Assembly: GCF_018977255.1 (NCBI RefSeq)
Contig: NW_024704767.1
Span: 1 to 64,000 of the forward strand
Length of the DNA: 64,000 nucleotides
From: Callorhinchus milii
Lineage: Eukaryota
Reading direction: 5' to 3'
The number at the start of each line of letters is the position of its first letter. Position 1 is the stretch's first letter. The notes beneath the pieces are model-generated. The model was not told the origin of the DNA and did not search any database. It saw nothing but the letters and a program-made list of their open reading frames with translations. The translations under genes and the position numbers were made by a program. This document shows positions 6,392-22,542 of the stretch, in pieces.

Positions 6392-6580
6392 CAAACAATA
6401 GGCAGTGATTTTATACAGAAAGTGACTTGAGTGGGAAGGTTTCCCAGGGCAGTTCTTGGTTTCAGCCAAGGGAGGGCATCAGCTTATTGAACACATTGCA
6501 CGAAAGAGGAAAATCCAGGCAGTGAGAGGGATGATTGCAGTGTCACAATGTAAAGTTCTCTGCAACAACGCTGTGCTGGT

Positions 6581-9500
6581 TCAGGGAACACCACTCCCAA
6601 GTTCTGATTGAGATGGTTTGATCAAAGGCAGATACCACTGGAATTTAAAAAAAAGAAGCACAATTAAGAGATTTCAGAGAAAGCAGTGAAATATTTTTGC
6701 CACAATTGAAAATCTGTCTGGGTAGGCAATTAAGGGTCAGAATAGATCACACCAAACTCACTTGTTCACTCATTCCAGCTATTTTTCTTCCTTCTGTGTT
6801 GAAAGGGGCTTTAAGTAGCCTTTAAAATAGGTCCGGACCAGATTGTGAAATGTGGCCAAGGTGTCCTGGGGAAAGAAAGAGAGTTTGTTTTAATGTCAAT
6901 TAACACATTTCATGTAGGGCAAATGTCTGGAATTGCTTCACAAAGAGGGAGGAAAGAGTCAGGGAGAATTTAAGGGTGTGGTGCATAAGGACACTGAGCG
7001 AGGCACAGTCACAGAGAAGGGTTTTGATTTAGTGTTGGCTCTGATTGTAGAGCAATCAAATTTACAGTAGGGAAGGAAAAGGAGTAGCCCTCCCCACTCC
7101 CCACCACACAACCTCCACCTTAGTTCCTTTGTGAATAAGGACAATTAAGAGCATATAATTCAGAGGCAAATGCTTAATACGAAGAAGCTGCACACAGCAG
7201 CTCTAGACTAATATGAGAATCGGGCATTGCACCTTTTCTTCTTCTGAGCAGATGTAAGTGAACCACCTCAAGCCTGTCGCCACGTGTGTGATTTCATCCC
7301 TGTAGATAATCTCGAGAAGCCTCACAGAGCTCTGGTCTGCCTGCGCCGCAAAGCGAGCCAGCATCTGAGGGTGCACGTCTAAACCCCTTCAGAGACAGCA
7401 ACACAGAGGTCAGGACCGAGGAAAGACAATTCATCTCAATAAAGCCCATCCCACCAGTACATTGTATATTTCGCCCACAAAATACACAGTTAATTCACTT
7501 TACAATATATTCTGTAAAGCACTTTGAGACGTCTCAACGACGTGATAAGGTGCTATATCAAATGCAAGGATTATTATTATTATTACTACATCGATTCTCC
7601 CATCAGTGCACACCCAGAGTCTTTTGCCTTGCTTGGTAAATTGTTTCAAAGCAGTTATAATTGAGTAATGAATATTTCCTAATGTTGCTTCTAAATTTAC
7701 CATTCACCACTTCTCATTTATGGCCTTACTGTGCAGCTGTCTGTCCTGATCTTATTTTACTGTATTACCAATAGGCTCCCTGCAAACCACACCATTGGCA
7801 TTACTTTCAACAGCTGCAGACAGTATATATACACACACACAGTTGCCAGAGTTTTAAAAACTAATGAGCAATCAGGTACAAAGGGAAAATGCAGATTTCA
7901 AACATGTTAAACCCACACAGACACAACACAGTGCACCTGGCCATTCAGACCTTATATTTCAGTGTTAAGGAATGTATATCCTTAATATTGACCTTCAGAC
8001 CAGATCAGTATTAAGGATATACATTCATCATACTGAAATGATTATCAATCTTCTTAATCTCAACCACATCAACAGTTGGAACCAGGAAACAGAGGGACAG
8101 TGATTCTGGGGAGATAATAGTGGGCAACTCGCCAATTCCTGCCATTCAATTAGTGAGGCACAGGTTACAGAGATGGTGTTAATGCAGAGGAAATGGAGAC
8201 CACTATTGGGAAATATTCAATGGGGGGGGGGGGGGGGGGGGGATGCTATAAGGTAAATACTTGACCCAGTTAAGAAATATTCATTACCTGGCTTCATGCA
8301 CCATGTGTACAATGGCAAGTCGTGCCAATAAGTCACTGGCCGTGTCAGACGCCGACTGCCACAAACCTGATGAAATGAATTCACACAATTAGAAAATTGT
8401 GTTTGTTACAAACAAAATTAAAAAATAAAAACACACAACATCCCCCATGCACAATCGTGGAAATTGAGATGCGATTTGCGGTATAGATTGTTCGCCTACA
8501 AAATACACAGTAAATCCTGTGAAGCGCTTTGAGACTCCCCCTGATGTGAAAGGCGCTTTACAGCATGTAAGGATTATTATGGGATATTATTGAATCTTGC
8601 CAGAACAGCGTTGCCGGGGGTCAATGCAGTAAGTATTTACAATACTGGAAGGAATTTATCAGATTCTCGGGATTCCTTAATTTCTCAGGTTTTCTTAGGC
8701 AATGATGGGTTTTGTGAAACGATCTCTGATCAGAGCGGGAGGACCCGAGGATTTACACAGGCTGACAGTGAGCTGGCTGACCGTTATGTACCGGTAGTGC
8801 TCCAAAATAACTGCCCAGCTCCTTGATCCTGTTCGCCAACAGCTTGTAATGCTGAAAATCAAAGAGAAGATTCAATGAATATGCAGCTGCAGAGACTCTG
8901 GAGGAAACGGATTCAATTTAAAACCAATGGGAGCAGTCTGGTCTGACCTTGGCCTCCTCTCCCGCCACTCTAACAAAGTCGCTGAAGAATTCTAGGGGCA
9001 ATGACCGCCCATTCTTCAGCTTCACCATGGAAAAGCGAGCGATGATGTCCCACGAGAGGTCTATAGCCCACTGCTCGATGTTGGCAAGTGAATGCAGCAA
9101 CGCTATCCGGCTGGCCTGGGAAATACACAAGCCCCACCGAGGCAGGTTAGTCCACACAACCACATCAGTCAACTCGGAGGTGTATTGGGGAGGGACTGTC
9201 TTAGACATTACGAGAGAAGGTTGGGTGAAGAAGGTTCTTCGGCCAATTTGAACTAGTCAGCAAACATGCTGCGCTCATCTCCCACCCACCCCAGCTCAGA
9301 GCAATATCCAGAGTGCCTCTTACTAACCAGGGTGCCACCTTTGCCCCTCTTGATCCTGCCCGGCTGCAGCACCTTGAGGTTCTCCTGTCTGCTGGGCTGT
9401 GGTGGGACATCTCCATGGCCAACCTCTCTGATTTTACCTGAGGTCCACCACTTCTCCACTTGGTCTGTCAGGGTTACCTGTGTCCAGGGGGAGAAGGGGA

Positions 9501-12087
9501 GAGTGTGTGTGAAAATAATAAGAATTCAAAACAATTCAAACCCCCCCCCCCTCCCTATGTCAAAAAGTCCCAAAATCAGCAGACGAGCAGAGGTTCGATT
9601 TTCCTTGATAATTCCTGACTGCTCATGAACACTTCCCTCTTCCTCTGGACCTCACCTTCTCCTCAGCGTCTGATGTACAGAGGATCTTCACAGCCCAGTA
9701 ACAGAGGGAATCCTCAGAACTTGTAGTAGTCAGAGACTTCAAGGAGAATCTCTCTATGTAAAGAAAAAAAAGGAAACACATTGATACGCCTGCTATATTT
9801 TCGAACGTGATTTTGTCATCTTTCTCCCCTCCCACTTGGGTGCCCAGTCAATTATATGAAGCGTTTTCAGATGTCCTCCTGACGCTAAATGAACGATGAA
9901 CACTTCATACTTAACAGCGAAACACTGCAATGTTTAGCGAGAGGTACTTACCGCACAATAATGTTCCAGATGCCTGCTGAGGAGCCCGGGACAGCGAGCT
10001 CTGGGTCTGAATGTAAACCTTGCCCTCGGAGATATGAACCTCATAAACCTGGTTCTGTTTGGAGAAGTACAAGTTTACAATGATGCTTTGATTTCCCCCA
10101 CCACCACACGCACTTAATTCTGAAGTCAACCCTGTCACCCATTAGACTCCCCTAAGTAAGTTTACATGGTGTTCTGTGCAATGCTGATATTACATTAAAC
10201 AGCACCCCCTACAGTGTAATGGACCAATAGAGCTCTGACAGTGCCCTGTGCAAACTAACACAAAAGCGATCTAATGCAGCTAACAAGAAGGTCTCACCGC
10301 GGTCTCAGTTTTGGTTGGTATTATAAGAATAATAAGTTTTGCTTTGTTAGTTCACCTGGAAACCTGTAGAGGAATGCCCGTCCTCCAAGCAGAAGTCAAA
10401 CTGATGCCAGGGACAAATTAATGCCAGCTTCCCTGTGCCCATGTCCTCAACATCTCCCAGTTCAAGAGGTCCCCCTGGAAAGAGCAGAGCAGAGATTCTT
10501 CTCTCAGTTACTGGTGAACACAGAGCACATTTACCTCAGTGGTCATGCTCCTGAGTTTAGCATATTGGTCACTTGCTCGCTTTGTAAATAACTATAGCAA
10601 TACCAAATTAAAAATCAATCATGTTTACTGCTGGCCCTAATATGTTCTGACATGGATGACCTGGAGATTTCAAAATAACTACGGTTCCCAGACCACATAA
10701 GCCAATGAGACATTCATTGTCACACTGCAATTCATGGGACTCTTCCCACTCAGCTCCTGTTCACCCTGCAAGCTAAAGCCCTAACATTTAGGGTGGTCCG
10801 AGCTCGACAAGCAGGTGGGAAAGCTTGCCAGACTCTCTATGTCAAGCTATGTGGTTTCAGTTGGTTAGATTCCAGCAGTTACACGAACGCACACTCTGGG
10901 GTCCCCAAGCTTTGGCTCTTGCCAACCTGTGCCTAATACTTTCTGAAATTTGGTAAGCAGGACAAGTCCCTTCAGGGAAAGAGGGCGCATTCCATTCCAA
11001 TAAACATATCCAGAATTTCCACGTGTAGGTGGGATGCATGGAATTCTCAGCTTGGTTTGGATAGCCTTAAGCACAGTGATGGGTTTCTGAATGTGTCAAG
11101 ACACCCGGCCGACCAAAATAAATTGAATCACGATGAGCAGGTGGTGAATCGGCAACTATAACCGCGCTGCCTCCATCACTAGTGTGCCTGCAGTTCAGGA
11201 CAGATTGATAATTCAGTGGGACCCAAGTCGTGTCCCCGCATACAGCGACTCTCCAGCGACAAACGCCTACCTTCGTGCGGACAGGCAGAATCCATTGCAT
11301 AGAAACGATCATTGTTGGTGCGGACCAGGACGATGTGCTCGCCATCGTCAGAATACAGCCTGGAAAACAAGGGAGCTGCTACATCTCCTCCATGACAGTC
11401 ACCTTTGCCTCGTGAGATACACTGACCCCGGGGAGGGCTCGGATTTGAGCAGATAAGGCCCTCTCCTCAGACCGTGCCCCGTCCCCCACCACCACCTGTC
11501 CCATAACCAGCCTTCAGCCCCGCCTCATTGCCCTCCCCAACCCCACAGACCCACCTCCAGCTTTATTGCCACTTCCTAGTCCCATAGCCCCGCCTCCAGG
11601 CCAATAACTCCACCTCCATTGCCCCTCCCCCCAGAGCCCCATCTCCAGGCCAATAACTCCACCTCCATTGCCCCTCCCCCCAGAGCCCCATCTCCAGGCC
11701 AATAACTCCGCCTCCAACTCCATTGCCCCTCCCCCCATAGCCCCACCCCCAGGCCAATAACTCCACCTCCATTGCCCCTCCCCCGGAGCCCCACCCCCAG
11801 GCCAATAACTCCACCTCCATTGCCCCTCCCCCCGTAGCCCCGCCTCCAGGCAATAACTCCACTCCATTGCCCCTCCCCCGGAGCCCCGCCTCCAGGCCAA
11901 TAACTCCGCCTCCAACTCCATTGCCCCGCCCCTCTCTCAGCCCACGGCTCCCTCCCCCCCCCCCCCCTGTTTACTTGGTGCAGGGGGCGGGCAGGCTGTC
12001 CAGGCGCCCCGCGCACTGCCAGCCGGTGCCGCTCACCACCTCCCTCAGGGCGGACACCAGCTCCTCGGCGAAAACCCGCTCCGACAT
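6581..12087 (-). CDS. Uncharacterised Rieske [2Fe-2S] plus DUF455 ferritin-like (di-iron) fusion protein, 12 coding exons, about 434 aa
   Basis: Phase-consistent GT-AG exons 11975-12087 (GCCATG start), 11271-11359, 10356-10474, 9952-10054, 9656-9753, 9328-9477, 8948-9115, 8782-8851, 8288-8366, 7233-7386, 6762-6865 (1-nt deletion), 6581-6637 (TGA). Rieske motifs SACPHEGGPL and ICPWHQFDF; ferritin-like motifs HSLANIEQWAIDLSWD, EEAKH, HMVHEARGLD, DEITHV. Confidence 0.9.
7956..8039. repeat. Inverted repeat / hairpin with ~35-bp arms and a 13-nt loop in intron 9 of the Rieske-DUF455 gene
   Basis: ATTTCAGTGTTAAGGAATGTATATCCTTAATATTGA (7956-7991) pairs with TCAGTATTAAGGATATACATTCATCATACTGAAAT (8005-8039). 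Confidence 0.85.
10860..11122 (-). mobile_element. Unclassified ~250-bp dispersed repeat, copy 1
   Basis: Shares the core GCATCCCACCTACACGTGGAAAT and flanks with copies near 26470-26665, 54280-54435 and 56620-56870. Confidence 0.7.
11586..11930. repeat. Minisatellite, 7 copies of a ~49-bp unit
   Basis: Unit AGCCCCRYCYCCAGGCCAATAACTCCRCCTCCATTGCCCCTCCCCC.. starting near 11586, 11635, 11683, 11739, 11787, 11836 and 11882. Confidence 0.92.
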
Positions 12088-12202
12088 GGCGCCGGCTTCC
12101 GCTCCCCCGACATGCCGGAAGTGACGCGCGAAACCCCCCGGCCACGCGCCCACGTGGGTGGTGGGGTGGGGCGGGGGGGGGAGGCGGAGGGGGCGGGGCG
12201 TG
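12088..12202 (-). promoter_or_regulatory. CpG-island promoter of the Rieske-DUF455 gene (ETS-CRE composite, E-box, GC boxes)
   Basis: CCGGAAGTGACG at 12115-12126, CACGTG at 12151-12156, GGGGCGGGG boxes near 12167-12199, directly upstream of the ATG at 12087. Confidence 0.65.
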
Positions 12203-12276
12203 GGCTGTGATGGACAGGGTTGACAGTGGTGCCCAGAGGACCTGTCAATCTGCTCACTGCACTGGTTGACTCTGCA

Positions 12277-13040
12277 GCTCTGCTCCTGCACTGCTCTGCT
12301 CCTGCACTGCACTGCTCCTGTACTGCTCTGCTCTGCTCTACTCCTGCTCTGCTCTACTCCTGCTCTGCTCTACTCCTGCTCTGCTCCTGCTCTGCTCTAC
12401 TCCTGCTCTGCTCTACTCCTGCTCTGCTCTACTCCTGCTCTGCTCCTGCCTGCTCTACTCCTGCTCTGCTACTCCTGCTCTGCTCTACTCCTGCTCTGCT
12501 CTACTCCTGCTCTGCTCCTGCACTGCTCTGCTCCTGTACTGCTCTGCTCCTGCACTGCACTGCTCTGCTCTGCTCCTGCACTGCTCCTGCTCTGCTCTGC
12601 TCCTGCACTGCTCTACTCCTGCTCTGCTCTACTCCTGCTCTGCTCTACTCCTGCTCTGCTCTGCTCCTGCACTGCTCCTGCACTGCACTGCTCTGCTCCT
12701 GCACTGCTCCTGCTCTGCTCTGCTCCTGCTCTGCTCCTGCATTGCTCTACTCCTGCTCTGCTCTGCTCCTGCACTGCTCCGCTCCTGCTCTGCTCCTGTA
12801 CTGCTCTGCTCCTGCACTGCTCCTGCACTGCTCTGCTCCTGCACTGCTCTACTCCTGCTCTGCACCTGTACTGCTTTGCTCCTGCACTGCTCCTGCTCTG
12901 CTCCGCTCCTGCACTGCTCCTGTACTGCTCTGCTCCTGCACTGCTCCTGCACTGCTCTGCTCCTGCTCTGCTCCTGTACTGCTCCTGCACTGCTCCGCTC
13001 CTGCTCCACTCCTGCACTGCTCTGCTCCTGCTCTGCTCCG
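12277..13040. repeat. Compound microsatellite of CTGCT/CTGCA/CTACT/CTGTA/CTCCTG words, about 760 bp
   Basis: Directly visible; produces stop-free low-complexity ORFs in several frames. Confidence 0.95.
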
Positions 13041-14204: not shown

Positions 14205-17200
14205 TTACCCTTTCAGCTGCACTCGCTGCATTCTGAATCTATTATACAATAGATTGTGCCTTTGTTGCCTATCTCTTCTCCCTCGCCCCACCTTAAAGGG
14301 ACTCACGATGGACTGACCAGGAGGGTTCCGCATGGTCTGGAATGCGCTCCGCTGACCGAGCTGCCTCTCCTCGCAGTTGAAGGTCATGGCCACGCCTAGG
14401 CTGGATCTCATGACCCTGGAAGTGGTGTCGGAACTCCCATCGAAGCACCTGCCCAGCGCAATCTCCTTGGCTGTTCTTGGGTCCTGATCGGTCACCGTGT
14501 AGATGCCATAGTTGTGACCCAGAGGATCCAGAGGGGCCAACATGGTGAACTCATTGGTGTTATTGTTGACGGCCAGCGGGAGATGGTTGACCAGGTATTC
14601 TTGGAGCATGTTATTAACGTTTTCCCTGCGGCAACTGGCCTGAGGGATGATCTTCACCAAGGTCCGGTCGACCCGTTCTTGGTCGTAGAGAACGCCGCTG
14701 CATTTGAACTCCAAGCAGACCGTGGAGACGCCATGACGGTCCATATCCCTGGCACTGCGCACATCACGGATGCCGTAAAGCCTGCCCACTGTCCTGGGGT
14801 GTGTGCCCCCCATGTTGCGGGATCTCACCGTGATCTCCTTCGGCCCGACAAGTTTGACCTTCAAATAGCAAGCTCGGAACTCCAACGGTTTTGGCCACCA
14901 GGCGAGGTAGTCCTCCGTCCAGCTCATCGGGTCATCCTCATTGAAGGGTACGGTGTTATAGTCATACCCGTCTCCCTCGACTCTGTAGAATCGGAAGTGG
15001 GCAGCGCTGAAGAGCGCTTCTTCACATTCTTTCAACTTCTCGTAAGGGTAGATGGGGCCGTTCGTCTCCTCGGGCATATTCGCCCTGGGTTTGGCCACAT
15101 TGATCTTAAAGGCCGTCTTCTTTACCTTGGGATCTTCGTGATCCGAGCGTCTGTAGTGCAGCTTGTTCAGGTAGGGCTGAGGCACGCCAATGGAGTAGGG
15201 GTTCATCTTGGGGAAGGACTCCACGGCCTCGAGTTCCTCTCCTCCCAGCGTGGCCTTCACATAGGCCGAATAAGCATCCACCCGCTGATCATCACAGAAG
15301 GCGGGCACACAGGCCCCGTTGGAGCCAGTGATGACACTGTCAAAGCGGCCCCAGGCCCTGGGGTTGGAGGAGGAGCCGGCCATGGGCTCCATGTTGATGA
15401 GTGTCACCACGACTCCCTCAACTTGCTCGCTTGGCATAAAGCGATCGCCTCGAAACGCTCTGGCCTTCAGATAGCATCTCCTGCTCTCGGGGACGTCCAA
15501 GTTGAACAGCCTCCTCTCTCGGATCTCCATATTGCCGACCAGGAAGGTCCTCTCCTCTCGCTTGCCCCGCCGCTGGCTGACAAAGGTGAAGTCTCCTTCC
15601 TCGTCCCAGTAGCCCGTCTTGGGGTTGAGGGACCACAGCTTCATCCTCTTCAAGTGCTGAGGCATCTTGACCTGAGCCGAGTCCAGGAAGACCTTGACCT
15701 GCCCGGCATTGAGACTCTCGGTCGCGGACTCATCAGTAAAATCCACAGAAAACATGCCATAGCTCCTGAGTGGGAGAGCGGCTCCTTCCTCATCGATGAA
15801 GTTCAGGTCGCTCTGGGCTGCCGAAGCCAACGAGATGTCCCTGGGATCTAAGAAGGTCACGCTGGCCTGCACTTTTGCCACTGTAGATGTCTCCATTCTG
15901 TCTGTAGAAGGAGTTGGGAGGGATTTCCAACTCGGCTACGGGGTCCTGCCTTTCTGTGCCCCCCAGAGAGATGGTGTTGCTGATGGTACAATCCAAGGTG
16001 ACCGCAGGTTGCTTCCTTAGGAGTTTAATCTCGTGAAAGACTGCACCTCCTTTTTTGTTGAACGGCAGAACTTTGGTCGTGTTGACAAACTTCTGGTAGC
16101 GATCCACAAAGGTCAGCACCAGCCGATCAATATCCATGGGAACCTGGATGGAGAACGTGCCCTTGTATCCAGTCATGCTAATCCTTTTCCCATCCATGAA
16201 GAGATACCCGAACCTCATGGGCTCCCCGTTATCAGCTGCCAATGCCCTACCCCGGACAACTGCCTTGGTTTCAACGCACCTCTGACACCCACACCTGCTG
16301 ACGGCCTTGATGGGAAGCACGTGCCCACTGCATGCCACTGTCCTCTCTTCCAGTTCCACCGCCCCACAGCAGTAAGCAGTGGTATCTTTGCATTGCAGGC
16401 CCTGGTCTCTCTCTCCGGCACACGTGGTCACAGGGCATCTGCCCACGTCATAGTAAAAGGAGCGGGACTGGTTCTGGTAGCAATCGTAAGGAAGGCGAAT
16501 TAAGTAGCTCTCGGGTTTGGGATTACAGGACGGTGAATCTTGTGCTGGGGAAACAAGAACGTCTGTTATTAATCTTCAGATCTACACGTTTCAAACAAAT
16601 GGAGTCCCATAGTGTAGTGGCTTGCACTCTCGCCTCGCAAGCGAGAGGACCTGGGTTCAATTCCCGGGAAGAATTGACAAGAATTAGGCAAGTTCCAGTA
16701 CTACACACCTCTGTTTAACTAGCAATGAGTAGGAACCCGGTTGCTAGTGCTTTTCATGGTAATAATCCCTGCAAACAAACAAACCAAAAACAAACAAAAA
16801 AATGGTCACTCTATCCATGACTGTTTGTGGGACACAATCACCCACAAAATACAGTCAATTCGCAATTCACGCTACATCTCATTTTAGTAACCCAGTAAGT
16901 ATTACAGTACAGTTCCCAACCAATAAGAATTAATATATATTTAATTGAGGTACTTGGTGAAAGGCCAAGGCCCACAGTGCAATGAACCAGCAAGGTTGAA
17001 AATAGTAGCCTGAGTCAAAACATCAAGCGTGAGCTAAATGTTATTTCTGGTTTGCATGATAGATAATTCAGGCACTGGGGAGGTGCAATTGGCTTGCGCT
17101 CTCCTCTTTATTTTCAAGGATCAATTATTTTTAATGAAGTAGCTTTAGAACGACCAAAAAATAAGAAATACGCAGGTTCAAGTTAATTATTAAACCGTGT

Positions 17201-20200
17201 TAGATGATATTACTGCTCCATTACTGTAAATATAGTGAGCTTTTTTCAGCCTGGAGGAAAATGCCTGCACTACATATGCCCAGTTGGCGGCGCCCTCTAG
17301 CTTAGATCCCTAATATCATTGTTGGCTTGTGCAATGCATAATAACTTTTTTTTAAACAAAGTTCTCCCAGTATCTGTGATCCCTATCAACACGCACTGGC
17401 TAGGCTTTCACATGACTGCATGAGATAGGTATCCAAATATGATACCATCGTGGACCTCTCCTGAACCACTTTCTTCAAGAGAAGAAACTGTTAACAAGAA
17501 AAAAATGTTTCTTATGCTGAGATAATAATAATAATTTATTTGATATAGTGCCATATCGCGTTGTTAAGACATTTCAAAGTGCTGGACAGAATTTATCGTA
17601 AAGTGAACTGACTGTGATATTGGACGTGATTCCATTGTAGACTTTAATGCCTTAAAAAACAGAACTGCTTATCTCAACAAAAAGAGCAAATGGGTTTGCA
17701 GTCCTCTGTAATCAATAGAAGTGCTGTGTCCAGATGTACAATTACCTATTATAGTAAGACTCGCAGGCCAGGACTTGATAGAGCCAGCACTGTTGCTAGC
17801 TTTGCAGTAATACTGCCCTGTGTGTCTCATCTGCAGTTGCCTCAACACCAGCATACTGTCATATCTATATTTCTTGGAGTCCAGCAAGGAGCTATTGTGA
17901 TACCTGCAAAGAGACAAAACAAAGACTATTTAAAGGGGGAGAAATCTACCAAATTTAATCGGAAAGCAAACACGTTTAATGCAACTACCATTCACCTAAA
18001 ACACTCTGCCCTAAACAATCAGCACTCCTCCATTAAAGCAAAGACAGTAACAGATACTACAGAATGGACTGCTGTGTTGTTACATTTTATCAAAGAAACA
18101 CATATTGCAAATAATCCTTCTTATACAATATAATAACGTGCAATGTATGGTTACCAACTGCACACTGCTTGTAATCTACATTGTATCCGAGCAAGCATAT
18201 CCCTTTATTCTCATGAGAACATCACAACGTTTAATATCATTGAAAAGCAGACAGGTGATTCTGTGGTGTCTGTCTCAGCTGGCTACAGAGTGTGAATGGC
18301 ATAAGGTTGAGAGGATGGCGGTGCCTGGCTGGGATGGGTCACACAGGGCAAGGGGGGGAAGCAGAGTCGAAGTTAAAGACAAACTTAAAATAAAACTGTT
18401 CTCACCACAAGTACTTGTGTGGTGGAGGGTCACTCTGAACCTTGCAGCAGAAGGTTACGCTCTCCCCTTCACGCCTGGCTTTGCTCACAGGGTGTTTGGT
18501 GATGTACGGCTTGTCTGTGAGGCAAAGAAAAGCAAACCGCTCAAATGATTGCATCCTCAGTCTTCCTGAACATCTTTTACCCTTTCCCCTAATGTCAGTA
18601 ACTGTAAATATATAAAAACTGTACACTGTAAAGTGGATTGACTGTATGTTTTGTGGGCGAAACGAGGCAGTATTAGCGTGGATTGAGTGACCAAATTATT
18701 ATTTTTTTTTGAAGGGATTAAAGTAATATAGCCATCGGCTAACAACCGTGTTACTACTTACTGCTTAGTAAACAGAAGCGTGTGGAGTAAGGAAACTTGC
18801 CTAAGGTTTCGCCCAGCCTGGGAATCAAACCCTGGTCTTGCGAGGTGAGTGCTCTAACCACTAAGCTATGGGACTCCATTTGGCCAGTTGAGCGTCCCAA
18901 ATGCTGTCTTTGCTGCGATCAGCTAACTCAGCACAGCTTGAACCTGCTCTGCACTGTTCTGTGTGAGTCAGTACTTCACAGGGCATTGCCTTCACCAACA
19001 GTGGACCATAAGAGGAGTTTTCAACCAATTATGTTGAGACTAATTTCATCAAAAAAAACACATCTGAATACCTGCTCTCTTGAGTTTCACTTCTATGGTG
19101 AAGATTTTGTTGTCACTGCGACTGAGCGTGACAATCTCTGTCCTGTACTTTTCCTTCTTGATCTTGATGGTTGTCCTGCCGTCAGGACAGAGCCCTGGGA
19201 TCCGAAACTTCCCCTTGTCATCACAGGTCATGAGGAACTTATCCGTGTTGCCCTGGAGGTAGATGGTTGCTCTGGAGGCTGGAGCCCCATCTTGCAGGTG
19301 AACCGTCCCATAGAGGAGATAGTCCTCGCACATACACGCATCGCACTGCGCATTGGCATGACCCATGGGGCATCTCAACTCACATCCTGCAACAGAGCCC
19401 ACAAAAAGCACAGTCAATTCACTTTACAGTATATCCTGTGAAGCGTTTTGAGACGTTTCAACCACGTGATAAGTCGCTATATCAAATGCAAGAATTATTA
19501 TTAACATCAAATGAGCCAAAAGGGCTTTCTTTCTGCATCTGAATCTCTCTTCTGATCTTGTACTTAAAAAGATATTTGTTAATACAATGCTAAGGCACTG
19601 ATCTCCATTAGGTCAGTGTTGAGAGTGTTGGGCAGGTTTTTATCATGCTAAGCAAACATAGGTGTTTTGAAAATATGTGTTTGGCAAAATCCTCGAGAAT
19701 CATAAATAAAAGTCACTGGTCTACATTACAAACACAAGAAAGAGCAAAATGTGTTTTATGATTTTTATATTTATCGAATGAGATCAATTGATGCATTCAA
19801 GACTGCGTTCTGGACATGCACAATTAACTCGGGCAAACAGGCTTTACATTACCGTATGGTTGTTTGACATAAGGTTTCTCAACCCAGCTGGTGACGACAG
19901 GATTGTTGAATGGCTTGGGGGTCGGCAAAGCAATAGGGGGTAGAGGAACTTTGAGCAGAGAAGAAAGAGACAAAAATAGTCAGCGAACAGAGGAAAAGAA
20001 ACAGACTTGCTACGAAACTATGACCGTTAGAGGAACGGGTACATAATTGGTCATTATTGGAATGAACACTGATGTGTGTGGTTGCCCTCACCTCTAGTGA
20101 TGGATATCTCATTATTCTGACCCGCAGTGATAATTGTTTGGCAAAAAAAAAACATTGGCTAAATGTAGGCTGGTTAGAGAGAGACAAGATTGGAGTTTAT

Positions 20201-22542
20201 CAAATCCTAACTTTGACCAACCAGGTTAGGCCATCCTTAAAAGTCGACCAGATTCACAGTAATGGACAAAGGGTTAGTGTTTACTGCAGTGATTGGATTG
20301 ACATTGAGATTGATGGAGTGTGCAATAGTAGCTTCCACTATTGATCATGATGTTCACACAAGTACTTATTTGATTGGCAAGGAAAAGCGGGATGACTGAG
20401 CCTCAAGGCTGGTGCACACACAGTGAGTGTTGGGATTTGCTGGTGGAGAAGTTATAAGAGGAAGTGGTGCCAGGGAGATTGGCAGGAACTCATGGCTGGC
20501 TCAACTTGGCTGCAGGGTCTGAAAACCTGCAGAAGGTTTGGACGCATTGAGTGGCTTAGATTGGCTCCAGAGTCTGCACATTACTGACTTAGATCTACTT
20601 AATGAACTGAACTCCCAGCTTCACTTCTGAAGCCAGTACAAAAGTGAAAGTGCACAGAACCTCCTTCAAGGCACATCTCAAGACAGTCCTCTTCAACCGT
20701 GCCTTCGGTCACCCTCCTACCCCTACTCTCTTTGCCCTCCACCACTCTTGATCCCAACCCCCTGCTCGGGTCCAAATCTCTGACTGTCCAGCACCTTGGG
20801 ACCCCCAACCGACTTGAAAGACGCTGTACAAATGTGAATAGTTGTTGTTGTTGTACCTGCACAGACTGTTCCTTTGCACATCCTGCCCTCCTCCACAGGT
20901 CCAAGACACTTCTGCTCCCATCTGCGACCCTGAGTAGAGCATGTCCTTCGTCGGTTCTGAACTCCAGTCTGGTTACAGGTCGCTGGGCATGAGCTCCATT
21001 CAGACCAATGGGACCAATAGCTCCGTGCCACAGTGGATGTGGCCCCTGAGGGAACAGTTTGGAATTTATTCCATTTCCAAATAATTACCAGCGATTCACT
21101 GGAATGTCAAAGTTATTGGCGCTCCATCCCCTGGCTTCTCCAACTCATCCATCATTCCTCTCCCAATGTTAATGTTTGGCATTAAGCCCGATGTGGGGCT
21201 TGAACCCACAACCTTCTGACTCAGAGGGGAGAGCGCTCGGACTGCACAAGGCTGACACACAGGCTTGGCAATTAATAATAAGTAAATCATCTACCTCAAT
21301 AAATTAAATGAATAAATTACCTAAGTAACGTGATTTACCTGGAGCAATATCATTTCATTAATCCAGTTACACAATTTATCTAAAAATATGATTAGGAATA
21401 AATACATTTAAAAACATTGCTTTCAAAGATGGTTGTTTATTATTGTTTTATATCGGACCTCAGACTGACACAGTACCTACCTTTTGGGCATTTGAATCGA
21501 ACAGCGTAATTGGAGCACAGTTTACCAGGACGCTGCTCCTTATTGATGCACCAGAAGCCATGCTGTGGGTCAGAGTGCACCACCTCTCTGGTGTTGGCGG
21601 CCGGCATCCAGTCTGCAGTCCGTGCCTCAAGTTCAGCCGGTCTCCGACACACTCTTTCCCGATAATAATGTCGGATTCCCTCGAGCCGTTCATAGTCTCC
21701 ACTACCACCGGGATGGTCTATATTGAACCAGGACGTCCATTCCCACTGAACTGAAGAGCGGAGAGGTTACCGTCAGCAGAGCCAAGAATTCACTGAGCGA
21801 CACAAACTTAAGAGATTGCTTGAGAGCCACGACCTGCTCCCGAGGACACTGCCAACTGTACAGCCAACTGCTGGAAATGCAAGAGGCTTGAACGTCCAAA
21901 GCACAACTGACCTCCTGATCAATGATGTGCTGTGTATCTATCATATCTATTTTGGTAGGCTAGTGCGAAATTAAAATATCACACCAATTTATGAAATAAT
22001 AATACTGTAACAATAATAGTTGCATTTGGTACAGCGCCTTATCACGTCGTAGAGACATCTCAAAGCTCTTCACAGAACATATTGTAAAGTGGATTGACTG
22101 TGTATTTTCTGGGCGAAACGCGATAGCAATAGCCAAGTGCGCACGGCAATATCCCACAAACAGTCGTGGATTGAGTAAAGTAAGTAAAGTTTTTTTTTAC
22201 TTACAATATTGAGGAAGTTTTTTGTATTAACCGACTGACCTTATTATTGCATATTAAACATCAACATACACATGTATTTGTGTTTACAGTTTACCTGATG
22301 GTGAAATAACAGATTAACATTGGGGAAACGGTATTACTTTATTCAGGTGAACTATAACTGAAGACTGCGTGTATCGGGTTTCATACTGCGTTGTCTCCTG
22401 AAACCGCTAAACTTTCAAATCAGAAATCAAGAGTCACCACAGGTCACAGGAGTGTGTGTGACCCTGCTACATACTGACCTTTTGATGTCCCGCAAACGAC
22501 TTGGAAGAAGAGAAAAAGAACCGTAGCCTTCGCTGTAGTCAT
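14205..22542 (-). CDS. CILP: Cartilage intermediate layer protein 1 (signal peptide, WxxW, TSP1, Ig, furin site, C-terminal region); one homopolymer insertion in the last exon
   Basis: Exons 22479-22542 (MTTAKATVLFLFFQVVCGTSK), 21481-21750 (WTSWFNIDHPGGSGDYERL), 20857-21045 (TSP1 WSHWSEWSSC), 19072-19386, 18406-18514, 17746-17903, 14205-16544 (SQRRGKREERTFLVGNMEIRERRLFNLDVPE ... PLDPLGHNYGIYTVTDQDP). Adjacent to PARP16 as in human, which favours CILP over CILP2. Confidence 0.93.
16601..16862 (+). mobile_element. tRNA-derived Deu-domain SINE (head plus partial body)
   Basis: GGAGTCCCATAGTGTAGTGG...GGGTTCAATTCCC head followed by TGTTTGTGGGACA core. Confidence 0.75.
18620..18877 (-). mobile_element. 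tRNA-derived Deu-domain SINE
   Basis: Family blocks GTAAGGAAACTTGCC and CTCTAACCACTAAGCTATGGGACTCC. Confidence 0.75.
20660..20854 (+). mobile_element. L2 LINE 3'-end fragment with TTG tail abutting a CILP splice donor
   Basis: Resembles the 3' end of the element at 5309-6391: CAGCACCTTGGGAC..CCGACTTGAAAGACGCTGTACAAATG..GTTGTTGTTG. Confidence 0.75.
21187..21258 (-). mobile_element. tRNA-like head of a second SINE family (shark-type)
   Basis: Minus strand GTGTCAGCC..GCGCTCTCCCCTCTGAGTCAGAAGGTTGTGGGTTCAAGCCCCAC with a B-box. Confidence 0.6.

What the first reader, a model, noticed from the sequence alone, without database searches (positions are those of the whole stretch)
6581..12087. Vertebrate Rieske [2Fe-2S] plus DUF455 di-iron fusion: a candidate self-contained oxygenase of unknown substrate
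Seen: one 12-exon reading frame joins an intact Rieske cluster site (C-P-H ... C-P-W-H) to a four-helix ferritin-like domain with a full ligand set: E (ANIEQW), ExxH (EEAKH), E (HEARG), ExxH (DEITH). Established: this E/ExxH/E/ExxH pattern defines di-iron carboxylate enzymes such as RNR-R2, MiaE, COQ7 and alternative oxidase, and Rieske ferredoxins pass electrons to non-haem iron oxygenases; DUF455 proteins are functionally uncharacterised. Inference: an electron carrier tethered to an O2-activating centre, with no obvious targeting peptide and a housekeeping-type promoter. I know no mammalian orthologue. The architecture may already exist as unnamed loci in fish, invertebrates or fungi, so the novelty is in function.
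Basis: partly seen in the sequence, partly recalled or inferred. Interest (0 to 1): 0.85.

Follow-up and report, generated by a model that had tools for sequence, protein, structure and literature searches.

The report
Expressed Rieske–DUF455 di-iron fusion gene
This is a real, expressed 12-exon gene of a cartilaginous fish that joins an iron-sulfur electron-carrier domain to a two-iron helical-bundle domain; databases already list it in many fish, amphibians, invertebrates and chytrid fungi, but its function is unknown.

Summary
A minus-strand gene of 12 GT-AG exons runs from 12087 to 6581. It encodes a Rieske [2Fe-2S] domain (exons 2-3) and a DUF455 ferritin-like domain (exons 6-12). All four cluster ligands and all six di-iron ligands are present.

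RNA-derived contigs from three studies show the predicted splice joints, including those that link the two halves. All four runs laid, and this species' own database proteins, carry the extra base.

The window is Callorhinchus milii. The gene is already catalogued there as "Si:ch73-314g15.3". In other species it is named "uncharacterized protein HI_0077". It occurs in fish, amphibians, lampreys, echinoderms, molluscs, a sea anemone and chytrids. No amniote is among the named rows of the best 120.

The Rieske half is closest to mouse RFESD. No solved structure matches the DUF455 half by sequence. Five literature searches found no functional study.

A built-in electron relay feeding an O2-activating di-iron site is the best reading, but it is untested. 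A peroxide-linked role is a live rival.

The parts
11975..12087 (-). Exon 1 (113 nt): ATG at 12087 and the conserved N-terminal helix that leads into the Rieske domain
   Evidence: It aligns with the N-termini of gar, frog, sturgeon, lamprey, urchin and anemone orthologues. It is covered by X12 record 10 (11974-12102), which runs on through e2-e4.
11271..11359 (-). Exon 2 (89 nt): first Rieske ligand pair C-x-H (Cys codon 11283-11281, His codon 11277-11275)
   Evidence: Pfam PF00355, E 6.8e-4, profile positions 23-45 of 88. Codons. Both columns are held in 40 of 40 fusion proteins.
10356..10474 (-). Exon 3 (119 nt): second Rieske ligand pair C-P-W-H (Cys codon 10415-10413, His codon 10406-10404)
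   Evidence: Pfam PF22543, E 1.5e-5. The best PDB match is 3d89_A, mouse Rieske domain-containing protein, E 6.8e-5. The joint 10473/11270 is seen in X5, X8 and X12.
9952..10054 (-). Exon 4 (103 nt): end of the Rieske beta domain and start of the linker
   Evidence: The joints 10054/10356 (X5, X8, X12) and 9753/9952 (X5, X8) are.
9656..9753 (-). Exon 5 (98 nt): linker and the first helix ahead of the DUF455 core
   Evidence: No Pfam family. The joint 9475/9654 (cut +2) is seen in X5, X8 and X12. It holds an invariant Lys column, 40 of 40.
9328..9477 (-). Exon 6 (150 nt): N-terminal part of DUF455, including a basic glycine-rich loop
   Evidence: Pfam PF04305 positions 10-59, E 0.041. The loop is low-confidence (pLDDT under 50) in the orthologue model, residues 209-217.
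8948..9115 (-). Exon 7 (168 nt): di-iron ligand E in N-I-E-Q-W (codon 9076-9074) and the E of the first E-x-x-H (codon 8956-8954)
   Evidence: Pfam PF04305, 65.1 bits, E 9.6e-18. Codons. Both columns are held in 39 of 40.
8782..8851 (-). Exon 8 (70 nt): begins with the His of the first E-x-x-H (codon 8851-8849), so this motif spans the e7/e8 junction
   Evidence: Pfam positions 109-131, E 2.9e-5. Codon. The His is held in 40 of 40. The joint 8851/8948 is in three runs.
8288..8366 (-). Exon 9 (79 nt): third ligand helix, with the E of H-E-A-R-G (codon 8295-8293)
   Evidence: Pfam positions 133-157, E 5e-7. Codon. Held in 39 of 40.
7233..7386 (-). Exon 10 (154 nt): second E-x-x-H in D-E-I-T-H (Glu codon 7295-7293, His codon 7286-7284)
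   Evidence: Pfam PF04305, 67.9 bits, E 1.3e-18. Codons. Held in 39 and 38 of 40.
6762..6865 (-). Exon 11 (104 nt in the window, 105 nt in RNA): C-terminal DUF455 helices. The frame breaks at the run of four C (plus-strand G 6805-6808)
   Evidence: 'Put in behind 6804: G' appears in all four runs. P0245 and P0253 have one more residue at this place. tblastn of orthologues changes frame here.
6581..6637 (-). Exon 12 (57 nt): last 18 codons and TGA (6583-6581)
   Evidence: The joint 6637/6762 is in X5, X8 and X12. It is an exact substring of P0253.
12088..12199 (-). 5' UTR and promoter-proximal CpG-rich patch, with one CCGGAAGTG site at 12115-12123
   Evidence: 12000-12199 has GC 0.775 and CpG observed/expected 0.83, against 0.50 for the window. 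The site occurs once, and 26 of 100 shuffles give at least one. RNA-like contigs reach 12102 (X12) and about 12193 (X5).

Best explanation
Shown: this is one expressed gene whose 434-residue product carries an N-terminal RFESD-type Rieske [2Fe-2S] domain and a C-terminal DUF455 ferritin-like helical bundle with the full di-iron ligand set.

Inferred mechanism:
- The Rieske cluster takes single electrons from an outside NAD(P)H-dependent reductase.
- It hands them to the di-iron centre, within one chain or across a dimer.
- The reduced di-iron centre binds and activates O2 to oxidise a still unknown substrate by hydroxylation, desaturation or N-oxygenation.

This would be the Rieske-ferredoxin-to-di-iron-hydroxylase relay of the toluene monooxygenases, built into one polypeptide. 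The gene is old in opisthokonts, inherited vertically in animals, and apparently lost in amniotes. The confidence given is for the inferred mechanism. That the gene, the fusion and its expression are real I put at about 0.95.
For: Gene and fusion:
- The exon model has 11 GT-AG introns.
- Ten introns are seen as exact joints in RNA-like contigs of three studies. Intron 1 is inferred from X12 record 10, whose 89 unlisted letters equal e2.
- X8 record 17, 1664 nt, spans e12 to e2.

Domains:
- Pfam matches each exon in colinear order.
- Of 20 long relatives scanned, 20 have DUF455 and 19 also have a Rieske family.
- Of the best 120 relatives, 117 have both domains precomputed.

Ligands:
- Rieske C, H, C, H are held in 40 of 40 fusion proteins. 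The di-iron E, E..H, E, E..H are held in 38 to 40 of 40. The window has every one.
- The six di-iron ligands also stand in 5 of 5 bacterial DUF455 proteins aligned.

Fold (model of the gar orthologue, pLDDT 86.1, pTM 0.71):
- The beta domain matches Rieske ferredoxins. The matches include 3d89 (Foldseek E 1.1e-6) and the toluene-4-monooxygenase ferredoxin 1vm9 (Z 12.6), which is known to reduce a di-iron hydroxylase.
- The helical half matches ferritin-like di-iron proteins. The longest alignments are to aldehyde-deformylating-oxygenase-like proteins (5ux2_B, Z 14.7, 183 residues), toluene/o-xylene monooxygenase, an R2-like oxidase and methane monooxygenase.

Inheritance: in a quick tree the animals form one clade (SH-aLRT 95) that follows the species order.
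Against: - No enzymatic, metal-binding or localisation data exist for any DUF455 protein in the papers searched.
- The structural matches of the helical half are generic. Dps-like proteins and bacterioferritins score as high (Z 13-15) as oxygenases, and Z under about 13 is common for helical bundles.
- Bacterial DUF455 proteins have no Rieske domain. Only 1 weak Rieske hit was found in 84 bacterial loci, so the family does not need a Rieske partner.
- A peroxiredoxin gene sits directly upstream in 35 of 78 bacterial loci. That fits a peroxide role at least as well.
- The distance between the two metal sites could not be measured, because the tools give no coordinates.
Confidence: 0.5

Rival explanations
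1. A peroxide-handling enzyme built like rubrerythrin. The di-iron site reduces H2O2, or other peroxides, to water. The fused iron-sulfur domain supplies the electrons, so the protein serves oxidative-stress defence rather than biosynthesis.
For: - Rubrerythrin is the known case of a di-iron helical bundle fused to a small iron-sulfur electron-entry domain (established knowledge, recalled).
- An AhpC/TSA peroxiredoxin gene lies directly upstream on the same strand in 35 of 78 bacterial DUF455 loci.
- The gene order glnE-peroxiredoxin-DUF455 has 4-nt gene overlaps in Qipengyuania and Sphingomonas, and peroxiredoxin-DUF455 occurs in Sinorhizobium.
- In Ralstonia the redox chaperone Hsp33 is a divergent neighbour.
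- Symerythrin and bacterioferritins are among the structural matches.
Against: - 43 of 78 loci lack the peroxiredoxin neighbour, among them Azospirillum, Ralstonia, Neisseria and Geobacillus, and also Thioclava.
- All positive loci are Alphaproteobacteria, so shared ancestry of gene order may explain the link.
- No Pfam rubrerythrin match appears in any of the 20 relatives scanned.
- A peroxiredoxin next to an O2-activating enzyme could equally mop up leaked peroxide.
Confidence: 0.2
2. An iron-handling protein rather than an enzyme acting on an organic substrate. The di-iron site would be a ferroxidase or iron-sensing site, as in ferritins and Dps, and the Rieske domain a redox partner or sensor.
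For: - Dps-like PA4880 (Z 14.7), a mini-bacterioferritin (Z 13.7) and bacterioferritins (Z about 13) are among the top structural matches.
- One paper passage describes mammalian RFESD as iron-binding and discusses it with iron storage (10.1101/2021.10.18.462363).
Against: - The DUF455 domain is about 270 residues, with extra helices before and after the core bundle. It aligns over more residues with oxygenase-type members (183-205 residues) than with ferritins (137-155).
- Nothing suggests a cage assembly.
- The many invariant Arg, His and Trp residues outside the ligand set suggest a substrate pocket.
Confidence: 0.08
3. The gene is a pseudogene in this genome, broken by the frameshift in exon 11.
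For: - The window's own letters give a stop at about 6784-6782.
- In the DNA-like run X1 only 7.43 of 14 depth carries the extra base, so a frameshifted allele or read error exists there.
Against: - All depth in the three RNA-like runs carries the extra base: 85.6 of 85.6, 47.3 of 47.3 and 9.9 of 9.9.
- This species' database proteins have the intact frame.
- Every conserved column of 40 orthologues is kept in the window.
- The break lies in a homopolymer run, a common assembly slip, and downstream of all ligands.
Confidence: 0.03
4. Two neighbouring genes, a Rieske ferredoxin and a DUF455 protein, are wrongly read as one.
For: - DUF455-only models exist in databases for some fish: P0269 (250 aa) and P0276 (252 aa).
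- Bacterial DUF455 stands alone.
Against: - The splice joints e3-e4, e4-e5, e5-e6 and e6-e7 are seen in the same contigs of X5 and X8.
- One 1664-nt contig spans e12 to e2.
- The fusion is the rule in 117 of the best 120 relatives.
Confidence: 0.02

Closest known systems
Catalogued orthologues: Callorhinchus milii 'Si:ch73-314g15.3' (UniProt A0A4W3JRY7 and A0A4W3JU03), the zebrafish locus of that name, and NCBI 'uncharacterized protein HI_0077' in fish, amphibians, echinoderms and molluscs
   Same: It is the same gene. Exons e2-e11 are exact substrings of P0245, and e3, e4 and e6-e12 are exact substrings of P0253. The relatives share the Rieske plus DUF455 architecture.
   Different: The database models of this species are imperfect. 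P0245 starts in the intron-1 tandem repeat and reads into intron 11. P0253 starts inside e2 and lacks the exact e5. The e1 found here matches the conserved N-terminus of other species. None of these entries has a known function.
RFESD, the soluble Rieske ferredoxin of mammals (mouse structure 3d89)
   Same: It is the best solved relative of the Rieske half by every test:
- exon 3 alone gives E 6.8e-5;
- the profile of 48 fusion proteins gives E 1.6e-22, against 1.5e-8 for the next entry;
- Foldseek rank 1, 32% identity.
The best language-model look-alikes are 157- and 138-residue chordate Rieske proteins.
   Different: RFESD is 157 residues with no DUF455 domain. I could not test whether it is a paralogue or the remnant of a fusion gene. 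Its own function is also unknown in the papers listed (listing only).
Rieske ferredoxin to di-iron hydroxylase relay of the four-component toluene monooxygenases (T4moC to T4moH)
   Same: The same two cofactor types act in the same proposed order. T4moC (1vm9, 4p1c) matches the Rieske half (Z 12.6; E 1.3e-4). The toluene/o-xylene monooxygenase hydroxylase 1t0q_B matches the helical half (Z 13.1, 205 residues).
   Different: There the parts are separate proteins, with an effector protein and a reductase, and the hydroxylase is a large multi-subunit complex. Here both are in one chain of 434 residues. There is no sequence-level membership in that family.
Rubrerythrin
   Same: A di-iron helical bundle fused to a small iron-sulfur electron-entry domain (recalled knowledge).
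   Different: Rubrerythrin has a C-terminal rubredoxin-type Cys4 iron site, not an N-terminal Rieske cluster. No Pfam rubrerythrin hit appears in the exons or in the 20 relatives scanned.
Rieske non-haem iron oxygenase alpha subunits (carbazole dioxygenase, KshA, SxtT, CntA)
   Same: An N-terminal Rieske domain followed by an iron-containing catalytic domain. Their Rieske domains match.
   Different: Their catalytic domain binds one iron and has a different fold. Here the catalytic half is a helical di-iron bundle. No match extends beyond the Rieske part (the matched profile positions lie within about the first 135).

Membership tests
Rieske [2Fe-2S] domain (Pfam PF00355 / PF22543, soluble Rieske ferredoxin type) | Ligand motif C-x-H ... 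C-x-x-H | tested here: met
   Cys 11283-11281, His 11277-11275, Cys 10415-10413 and His 10406-10404. These columns are held in 40 of 40 fusion proteins and are invariant in the 48 of A1.
Rieske [2Fe-2S] domain (Pfam PF00355 / PF22543, soluble Rieske ferredoxin type) | Profile match above Pfam's gathering score | tested here: inconclusive
   Single exons fall just short: e2 scores 19.9 bits against a cut-off of 20.3, and e3 scores 25.6 against 28.4. The exons were not joined. The same species' protein P0245, which holds e2-e4 exactly, carries PF00355, PF13806 and PF22543 in the precomputed list. Orthologues pass, for example P0015 with 62.8 bits to PF22543.
Rieske [2Fe-2S] domain (Pfam PF00355 / PF22543, soluble Rieske ferredoxin type) | Rieske beta-sandwich fold | tested here: met
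   Tested on the gar orthologue's model, not on the window's protein. Matches are 3d89 (Foldseek E 1.1e-6, target TM-score 0.65, rmsd 2.4 Å over 118 columns), 3c0d_A (Z 15.2) and 2qpz_A (Z 14.8).
Rieske [2Fe-2S] domain (Pfam PF00355 / PF22543, soluble Rieske ferredoxin type) | Binds a [2Fe-2S] cluster | not testable with these tools
   Needs purified protein with UV-visible and EPR spectroscopy.
DUF455 (Pfam PF04305) | Profile match above the gathering score (34.3 bits) | tested here: met
   e7 scores 65.1 bits and e10 scores 67.9 bits on their own. e6, e8 and e9 match the neighbouring profile positions in order.
Ferritin-like di-iron carboxylate superfamily | Ligand set E / E-x-x-H / E / E-x-x-H on four helices | tested here: met
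   Codons 9076-9074, 8956-8954, 8851-8849, 8295-8293, 7295-7293 and 7286-7284. The ligands are conserved in 38 to 40 of 40 eukaryotic proteins and in 5 of 5 bacterial ones. In the model they lie on helices 221-248, 262-288, 313-341 and 345-375.
Ferritin-like di-iron carboxylate superfamily | Four-helix-bundle core fold | tested here: met
   The orthologue model's residues about 216-421 align to many ferritin-like chains at Z 12-15. No single subfamily stands out.
Ferritin-like di-iron carboxylate superfamily | Binds two iron ions and reacts with O2 | not testable with these tools
   Needs metal analysis, Mössbauer or EPR spectroscopy, and O2-uptake assays.
Rubrerythrin | Rubredoxin-type Cys4 domain and a rubrerythrin profile match | tested here: not met
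   No such Pfam family in the exons or in the 20 relatives. The iron-sulfur domain here is a Rieske type and is N-terminal.
Rieske non-haem iron oxygenase alpha subunit | C-terminal mononuclear-iron catalytic domain | tested here: not met
   The only C-terminal Pfam family is DUF455. PDB profile hits to these oxygenases stop within the Rieske part.

The most novel reading that the evidence does not exclude
DUF455 proteins are an undescribed class of O2-activating di-iron enzymes. In opisthokonts the enzyme became self-sufficient by fusing to an RFESD-type Rieske ferredoxin. It makes or destroys a metabolite, or modified nucleoside, that animals with an aquatic life stage and chytrids need and amniotes gave up. 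Mammalian RFESD would then be a surviving relative of the electron-entry module whose partner is still unidentified.
Probability: 0.4. Interest if true: 0.7.

Novelty: already known. Interest (0 to 1): 0.45.

Why it matters
The gene itself is not a discovery. It is in UniProt for this very species and in NCBI for dozens of others.

What stands out is how well conserved this unstudied two-cofactor redox protein is:
- Every ligand is kept from chytrid fungi to amphibians.
- Animal sequences follow the species tree.
- No amniote is among the named rows of the best 120 relatives.
- There is no solved structure and no paper on function.

It is a clean target for finding an orphan enzyme activity, since zebrafish and Xenopus have orthologues. 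It also offers a handle on two other unknowns: the bacterial DUF455 family and mammalian RFESD.

For genome annotation it gives a corrected gene model for Callorhinchus, with the true first exon and last exon. It also flags a one-base homopolymer error or allele in this assembly.

Tried and rejected
- **Gene neighbourhood as a clue to function.** My first ORF calling on the 80 bacterial loci lost the DUF455 ORF (one search failed). The second try kept it in only 48 of 80 loci. I therefore counted the peroxiredoxin neighbour by tblastn instead. The result was 35 of 78, a partial link confined to Alphaproteobacteria and not a decisive clue. Other neighbours do not recur across orders: glnE, a YhdP-like protein, RF-2, an M23 peptidase, an EamA transporter, cysQ, and Hsp33 with gamma carbonic anhydrase.
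- **A named bacterial family.** NCBIfam has no model for the DUF455 part in 6 of 6 proteins tried.
- **A solved structure of DUF455 by sequence.** Exon 10 alone gave 0 hits at E up to 10. The 48-sequence profile gave 55 hits. Nearly all lie in the Rieske part. The two that reach further (4i84_A, 7b9v_Z) have E 0.18 and 1.1, and none covers the DUF455 core.
- **A specific structural subfamily.** The VIA-align wide search gave only generic ferritin-like matches. Foldseek's top 50 were all Rieske proteins.
- **Language-model look-alikes of the helical half.** Scores were 0.76-0.79 (AurF-like, phenol hydroxylase, aldehyde decarbonylase). That is below the level the tool calls more than a lead.
- **A misreading of my own.** The summed tblastn identity of 73% to P0245 came from overlapping pieces. 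Exact substring checks show identity.
- **Metal-to-metal distance.** Not measurable, because structure prediction returns no coordinates.
- **Rooting the tree.** The quick tree's root on the Geobacillus row is unreliable (branch length 10). I use only the unrooted splits.
- **Papers.**
  - Passages seen through 'find': PMC6214176, where a table lists DUF455 among domains present in anemone and not in coral. PMC4520260, where DUF455 could be related to a fold only through designed intermediate sequences. PMC3877243, where a table row names HI0077 'Ferritin-like protein'. 10.1101/2021.10.18.462363, on RFESD and iron.
  - No use: PMC4554924 has 0 whole-word occurrences. In PMC5649143 and 10.1101/2025.11.19.689285, HI0077 is a strain name.
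  - All other papers were seen as search listings only. Many 'DUF455' listings are really DUF4553.
  - I did not ask for supplementary files. Expression tables there may list this locus.

Full report
**1. What is in the sequence**

The gene lies on the minus strand. Translating the three minus frames of 6400-12200 and reading the borders gave 12 exons. All introns are GT-AG.

| Exon | Window coordinates |
|---|---|
| e1 | 12087-11975 |
| e2 | 11359-11271 |
| e3 | 10474-10356 |
| e4 | 10054-9952 |
| e5 | 9753-9656 |
| e6 | 9477-9328 |
| e7 | 9115-8948 |
| e8 | 8851-8782 |
| e9 | 8366-8288 |
| e10 | 7386-7233 |
| e11 | 6865-6762 |
| e12 | 6637-6581 |

I left out the step of joining the exons into one protein. 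Full-length analyses were done on public proteins returned by the tools.

**2. Domains**

Pfam on ten exons gave the following.

| Exon | Pfam family | E-value | Profile positions |
|---|---|---|---|
| e2 | Rieske PF00355 | 6.8e-4 | 23-45 of 88 |
| e3 | Rieske_4 PF22543 | 1.5e-5 | 45-76 of 119 |
| e6 | DUF455 PF04305 | 0.041 | 10-59 of 247 |
| e7 | DUF455 PF04305 | 9.6e-18 | 62-108 |
| e8 | DUF455 PF04305 | 2.9e-5 | 109-131 |
| e9 | DUF455 PF04305 | 5e-7 | 133-157 |
| e10 | DUF455 PF04305 | 1.3e-18 | 159-208 |
| e1, e4, e5 | none | | |

The first-frame reading of e11 also matched nothing.

Two motifs span exon junctions. The first E-x-x-H is split between e7 and e8. The Arg of H-E-A-R-G is a split codon between e9 and e10.

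**3.

Exon 11 is 104 nt long. The frame coming from e10 therefore runs into a TAG at about 6784-6782. The conserved tail of e11, and e12, need a shift of one base. Orthologues aligned by tblastn change frame at the same place.

**4. Reads**

One search found 24 runs of one organism. I laid four runs from four studies on 6500-12200.

- X1 shows no spliced joint and has contiguous pieces over introns, so it behaves as DNA.
- X5, X8 and X12 are labelled only 'RNA?' by the tool. They show joints with CT..AC ends, which are GT..AG on the minus strand, at exactly my exon borders.
- Ten introns are listed. X5 and X8 have 10 of 10. X12 has 9 of 10, the e4/e5 joint being absent there.
- Intron 1 is not among the listed joints. 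It follows from X12 record 10. This record covers 11974-12102, then 89 unlisted letters (the length of e2), then e3 and e4.
- X8 record 17, 1664 nt, runs from e12 to e2 and then continues unspliced into intron 1 as far as 11615. X8 has almost no depth on e1. This is intron retention, a different start, or a limit of contig assembly.

The joints e3/e4, e4/e5, e5/e6 and e6/e7 tie the Rieske part to the DUF455 part.

The same call reports 'put in behind 6804: G'. Depth with the extra base was 7.43 of 14 in X1, 85.6 of 85.6 in X5, 47.3 of 47.3 in X8, and 9.9 of 9.9 in X12. The RNA therefore has five C where the window has four, and the frame is intact: 1305 nt, or 434 codons plus stop. The window carries either a homopolymer assembly slip or one allele of a heterozygous individual.

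**5. Whose gene it is**

A search of 1.84 billion cluster representatives with e7 alone gave 450 proteins at E up to 0.001. I scanned 20 long hits with Pfam. All 20 have DUF455, and 19 also have a Rieske family.

Their source names are:
- 'uncharacterized protein HI_0077' in paddlefish;
- LOC116941911 in sea lamprey;
- uncharacterised loci in Lytechinus sea urchins;
- hypothetical or 'Rieske domain-containing' proteins in five chytrid genera.

A word-indexed search with the paddlefish protein gave 3650 proteins at E up to 1e-10. Of the best 120, 117 carry both domains. The named ones come from ray-finned fish, frogs, salamanders, caecilians, lungfish, coelacanth, Callorhinchus milii, lampreys, echinoderms, bivalves and a sea anemone. 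No named entry is a reptile, bird or mammal, although echinoderm and mollusc proteins score high enough to be listed. About a fifth of the rows have no name.

Exact substring checks show that e2-e11 are identical to the Callorhinchus protein P0245 (UniProt A0A4W3JRY7, 'Si:ch73-314g15.3'). e3, e4 and e6-e12 are identical to P0253 (A0A4W3JU03). Both have one more residue at the exon 11 break.

The window is therefore from Callorhinchus milii or something indistinguishable from it, and the gene is already catalogued there. The database models are imperfect:
- P0245 begins in the intron-1 tandem repeat and ends by reading into intron 11.
- P0253 begins inside e2 and lacks the exact e5.
- The e1 found here aligns with the conserved N-terminus of gar, frog, sturgeon, lamprey, urchin and anemone proteins.

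**6. Conservation**

I aligned 40 fusion proteins from vertebrates, echinoderms, molluscs, a cnidarian and chytrids, and added the exon translations as separate fragments.

- The Rieske Cys, His, Cys, His are held in 40 of 40.
- The six di-iron ligands are held in 39, 39, 40, 39, 39 and 38 of 40.
- The window has the consensus residue at every column that 37 or more of the 40 share. The only two not shown in the fragments are split codons.
- The six di-iron ligands also stand in all five bacterial DUF455 proteins aligned: Azospirillum, Sinorhizobium, Ralstonia, Neisseria and Geobacillus.
- Several further His, Arg and Trp residues are invariant.

**7. Structure**

I folded the complete gar orthologue P0178 with a 48-sequence alignment, A1. 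Mean pLDDT is 86.1 and pTM is 0.71.

- A beta domain spans about residues 20-125.
- Two low-confidence stretches lie at 134-144 and 209-217.
- Helices span 155-184 and 221-418.

Foldseek against the PDB ranks the mouse soluble Rieske ferredoxin 3d89 first (E 1.1e-6, 32% identity). Its top 50 are filled with Rieske proteins.

The search that does not lean on Foldseek gives two groups of matches.
- The beta domain matches Rieske ferredoxins at Z 12.6-15.2. One of these is the toluene-4-monooxygenase ferredoxin 1vm9.
- The helical half matches many ferritin-like chains at Z 12-15. These are a Dps-like protein, aldehyde-deformylating-oxygenase-like proteins (183-201 residues aligned), MJ0754, bacterioferritins, toluene/o-xylene monooxygenase, an R2-like oxidase, manganese catalase and methane monooxygenase.

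None stands above the rest, and the tool warns that such Z values are common for helical bundles. The fold class is therefore clear but the subfamily is not.

By sequence profile, 3d89 scores E 1.6e-22, against 1.5e-8 for the next entry. No PDB entry matches the DUF455 core. Exon 10 alone found nothing in the PDB. NCBIfam has no model for the DUF455 part.

**8. Bacterial relatives**

A scan of one genome per bacterial and archaeal species found 450 stretches that encode a relative. The best 80 are 44-54% identical to the DUF455 half only. By record title, at least 75 of them are Alphaproteobacteria.

A same-strand AhpC/TSA peroxiredoxin gene ends within 400 nt upstream in 35 of the 78 loci that have enough flank.

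Annotated records show:
- glnE-peroxiredoxin-DUF455 with 4-nt overlaps in Qipengyuania and Sphingomonas;
- peroxiredoxin-DUF455 in Sinorhizobium;
- other neighbours in Azospirillum thermophilum (cysQ), Ralstonia (Hsp33 and gamma carbonic anhydrase, divergent), Thioclava and a Geobacillus plasmid.

The Neisseria record has no annotation there. Rieske halves of four fusion proteins found one weak hit (E 3.8e-4) in the 84 bacterial loci held at that point. The fusion is thus a eukaryotic feature.

A quick maximum-likelihood tree of 19 eukaryotic and 31 bacterial DUF455 parts was built from every third of the 80 loci plus the four plasmid-collection loci. It puts 30 bacterial rows on one side of a branch (SH-aLRT 99). 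The animals form one clade (95) whose inner order follows the species tree. The Geobacillus row is very long, so the root is not trustworthy.

**9. How it most likely works**

Shown: one mRNA, two cofactor-binding domains with complete and conserved ligand sets, a Rieske-ferredoxin fold and a ferritin-like fold.

Inferred: electrons enter at the Rieske cluster from an outside reductase, pass to the di-iron site, and are used there to activate O2 on an unknown substrate.

The nearest working precedent is the Rieske ferredoxin T4moC, which reduces the di-iron hydroxylase of toluene 4-monooxygenase (established knowledge). Both partners appear among the structural matches. I put this reading at about 0.5.

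The main rival, at about 0.2, is a rubrerythrin-like peroxide-reducing role. It is suggested by the fused iron-sulfur domain and by the peroxiredoxin neighbour in part of the Alphaproteobacteria. An iron-handling, ferroxidase-like role is less likely. The pseudogene and mis-joined-gene readings are essentially refuted.

The acidic, conserved N-terminus that forms a helix in the model does not look like a mitochondrial presequence. That is an impression, not a test.

**10. Promoter**

The 200 nt around the start (12000-12199) have GC 0.775 and CpG observed/expected 0.83, against 0.50 for the window. One CCGGAAGTG site lies at 12115-12123, but 26 of 100 shuffles give at least one such site. 'Housekeeping-type' is plausible but weakly supported.

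**11. Literature**

- DUF455: 21 papers, many of them really DUF4553.
- PF04305, COG2833, IPR007402, HI0077, UCP012318, PIRSF012318: 5 papers.
- The zebrafish locus name: 0 papers.
- At1g06240 and related phrases: 4 papers.
- Rieske + ferritin-like + diiron + fusion: 1 paper, on cyanobacterial heterocysts.

None of these is a functional study of DUF455 or of the fusion. The passages I read are listed under Tried and rejected. RFESD has 54 papers in the library (listing only). I saw none on its mechanism. I did not ask for supplementary files, and expression tables there may mention the locus.

**12. Verdict**

The oxygenase function remains an inference. The Rieske half does have a mammalian relative.

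The feature is already catalogued, so it is not new as an object. Its interest lies in being a well-conserved, testable orphan metalloenzyme with no amniote among its named closest relatives. Interest 0.45.

Noticed in passing
window 6804-6808: The window has four G (plus strand) where all four sequencing runs, and the species' database proteins, imply five. In the DNA-like run X1 only about half the depth has the extra base. This is either an assembly slip or a heterozygous frameshift allele.
   Followed up: partly
window 11581-11932 (intron 1): A tandem repeat of period 49 (6.8 copies; also scored at periods 104 and 152), C-rich on the plus strand. The Ensembl-derived protein P0245 takes its first 21 residues from this repeat. 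Its first 7 residues occur four times in the window.
   Followed up: partly
window 12249-13039: A long CTGCTC-rich minisatellite (periods 11, 16 and 27; up to 70 copies) directly upstream of the gene's CpG-rich start region, between this gene and the CILP gene.
   Followed up: no
window 14205-21031, minus strand: The upstream neighbour is a cartilage intermediate layer protein (CILP) gene. The Pfam matches are CILP_C and CILP_8th (E 1e-100 and 7e-82), CILP and CILP_5th, a TSP1 repeat and a CarboxypepD_reg-like domain.
   Followed up: partly
window 7455-7645, 8410-8600, 10702-11083 (introns 9, 8 and 2): Interspersed repeats with very high summed contig depth, up to 1.26 million in X1. They carry many cross-joints and loose ends in all the runs laid. 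They look like SINE-type elements, which is an impression only.
   Followed up: no
window 11270-11615: In run X8 the 1664-nt contig that spans e12 to e2 continues unspliced into intron 1, and exon 1 has almost no depth in that run. This is intron retention, an alternative start, or an assembly limit. No in-frame ATG lies upstream of e2 in that stretch.
   Followed up: partly
loci L084, L086, L087 and 35 of 78 bacterial loci: In Alphaproteobacteria of several orders an AhpC/TSA peroxiredoxin gene directly precedes the DUF455 gene. It is often preceded by glnE, and the gene ends overlap by 4 nt in two annotated records. This may be an operon and a lead to the function of bacterial DUF455.
   Followed up: partly
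proteins P0269, P0276, P0253, P0002 (public relatives): Databases hold DUF455-only models of about 250 residues for rainbow trout and zebrafish, and isoforms that skip linker exons. Shorter isoforms without the Rieske domain may exist.
   Followed up: no
protein P0131 (chytrid Blyttiomyces, 723 aa) and P0012 (867 aa): P0131 has two Rieske matches ahead of DUF455. P0012 matched exon 7 in 10 separate stretches at 30% identity, which suggests an internally repeated relative.
   Followed up: no
I did not examine it.
   Followed up: no
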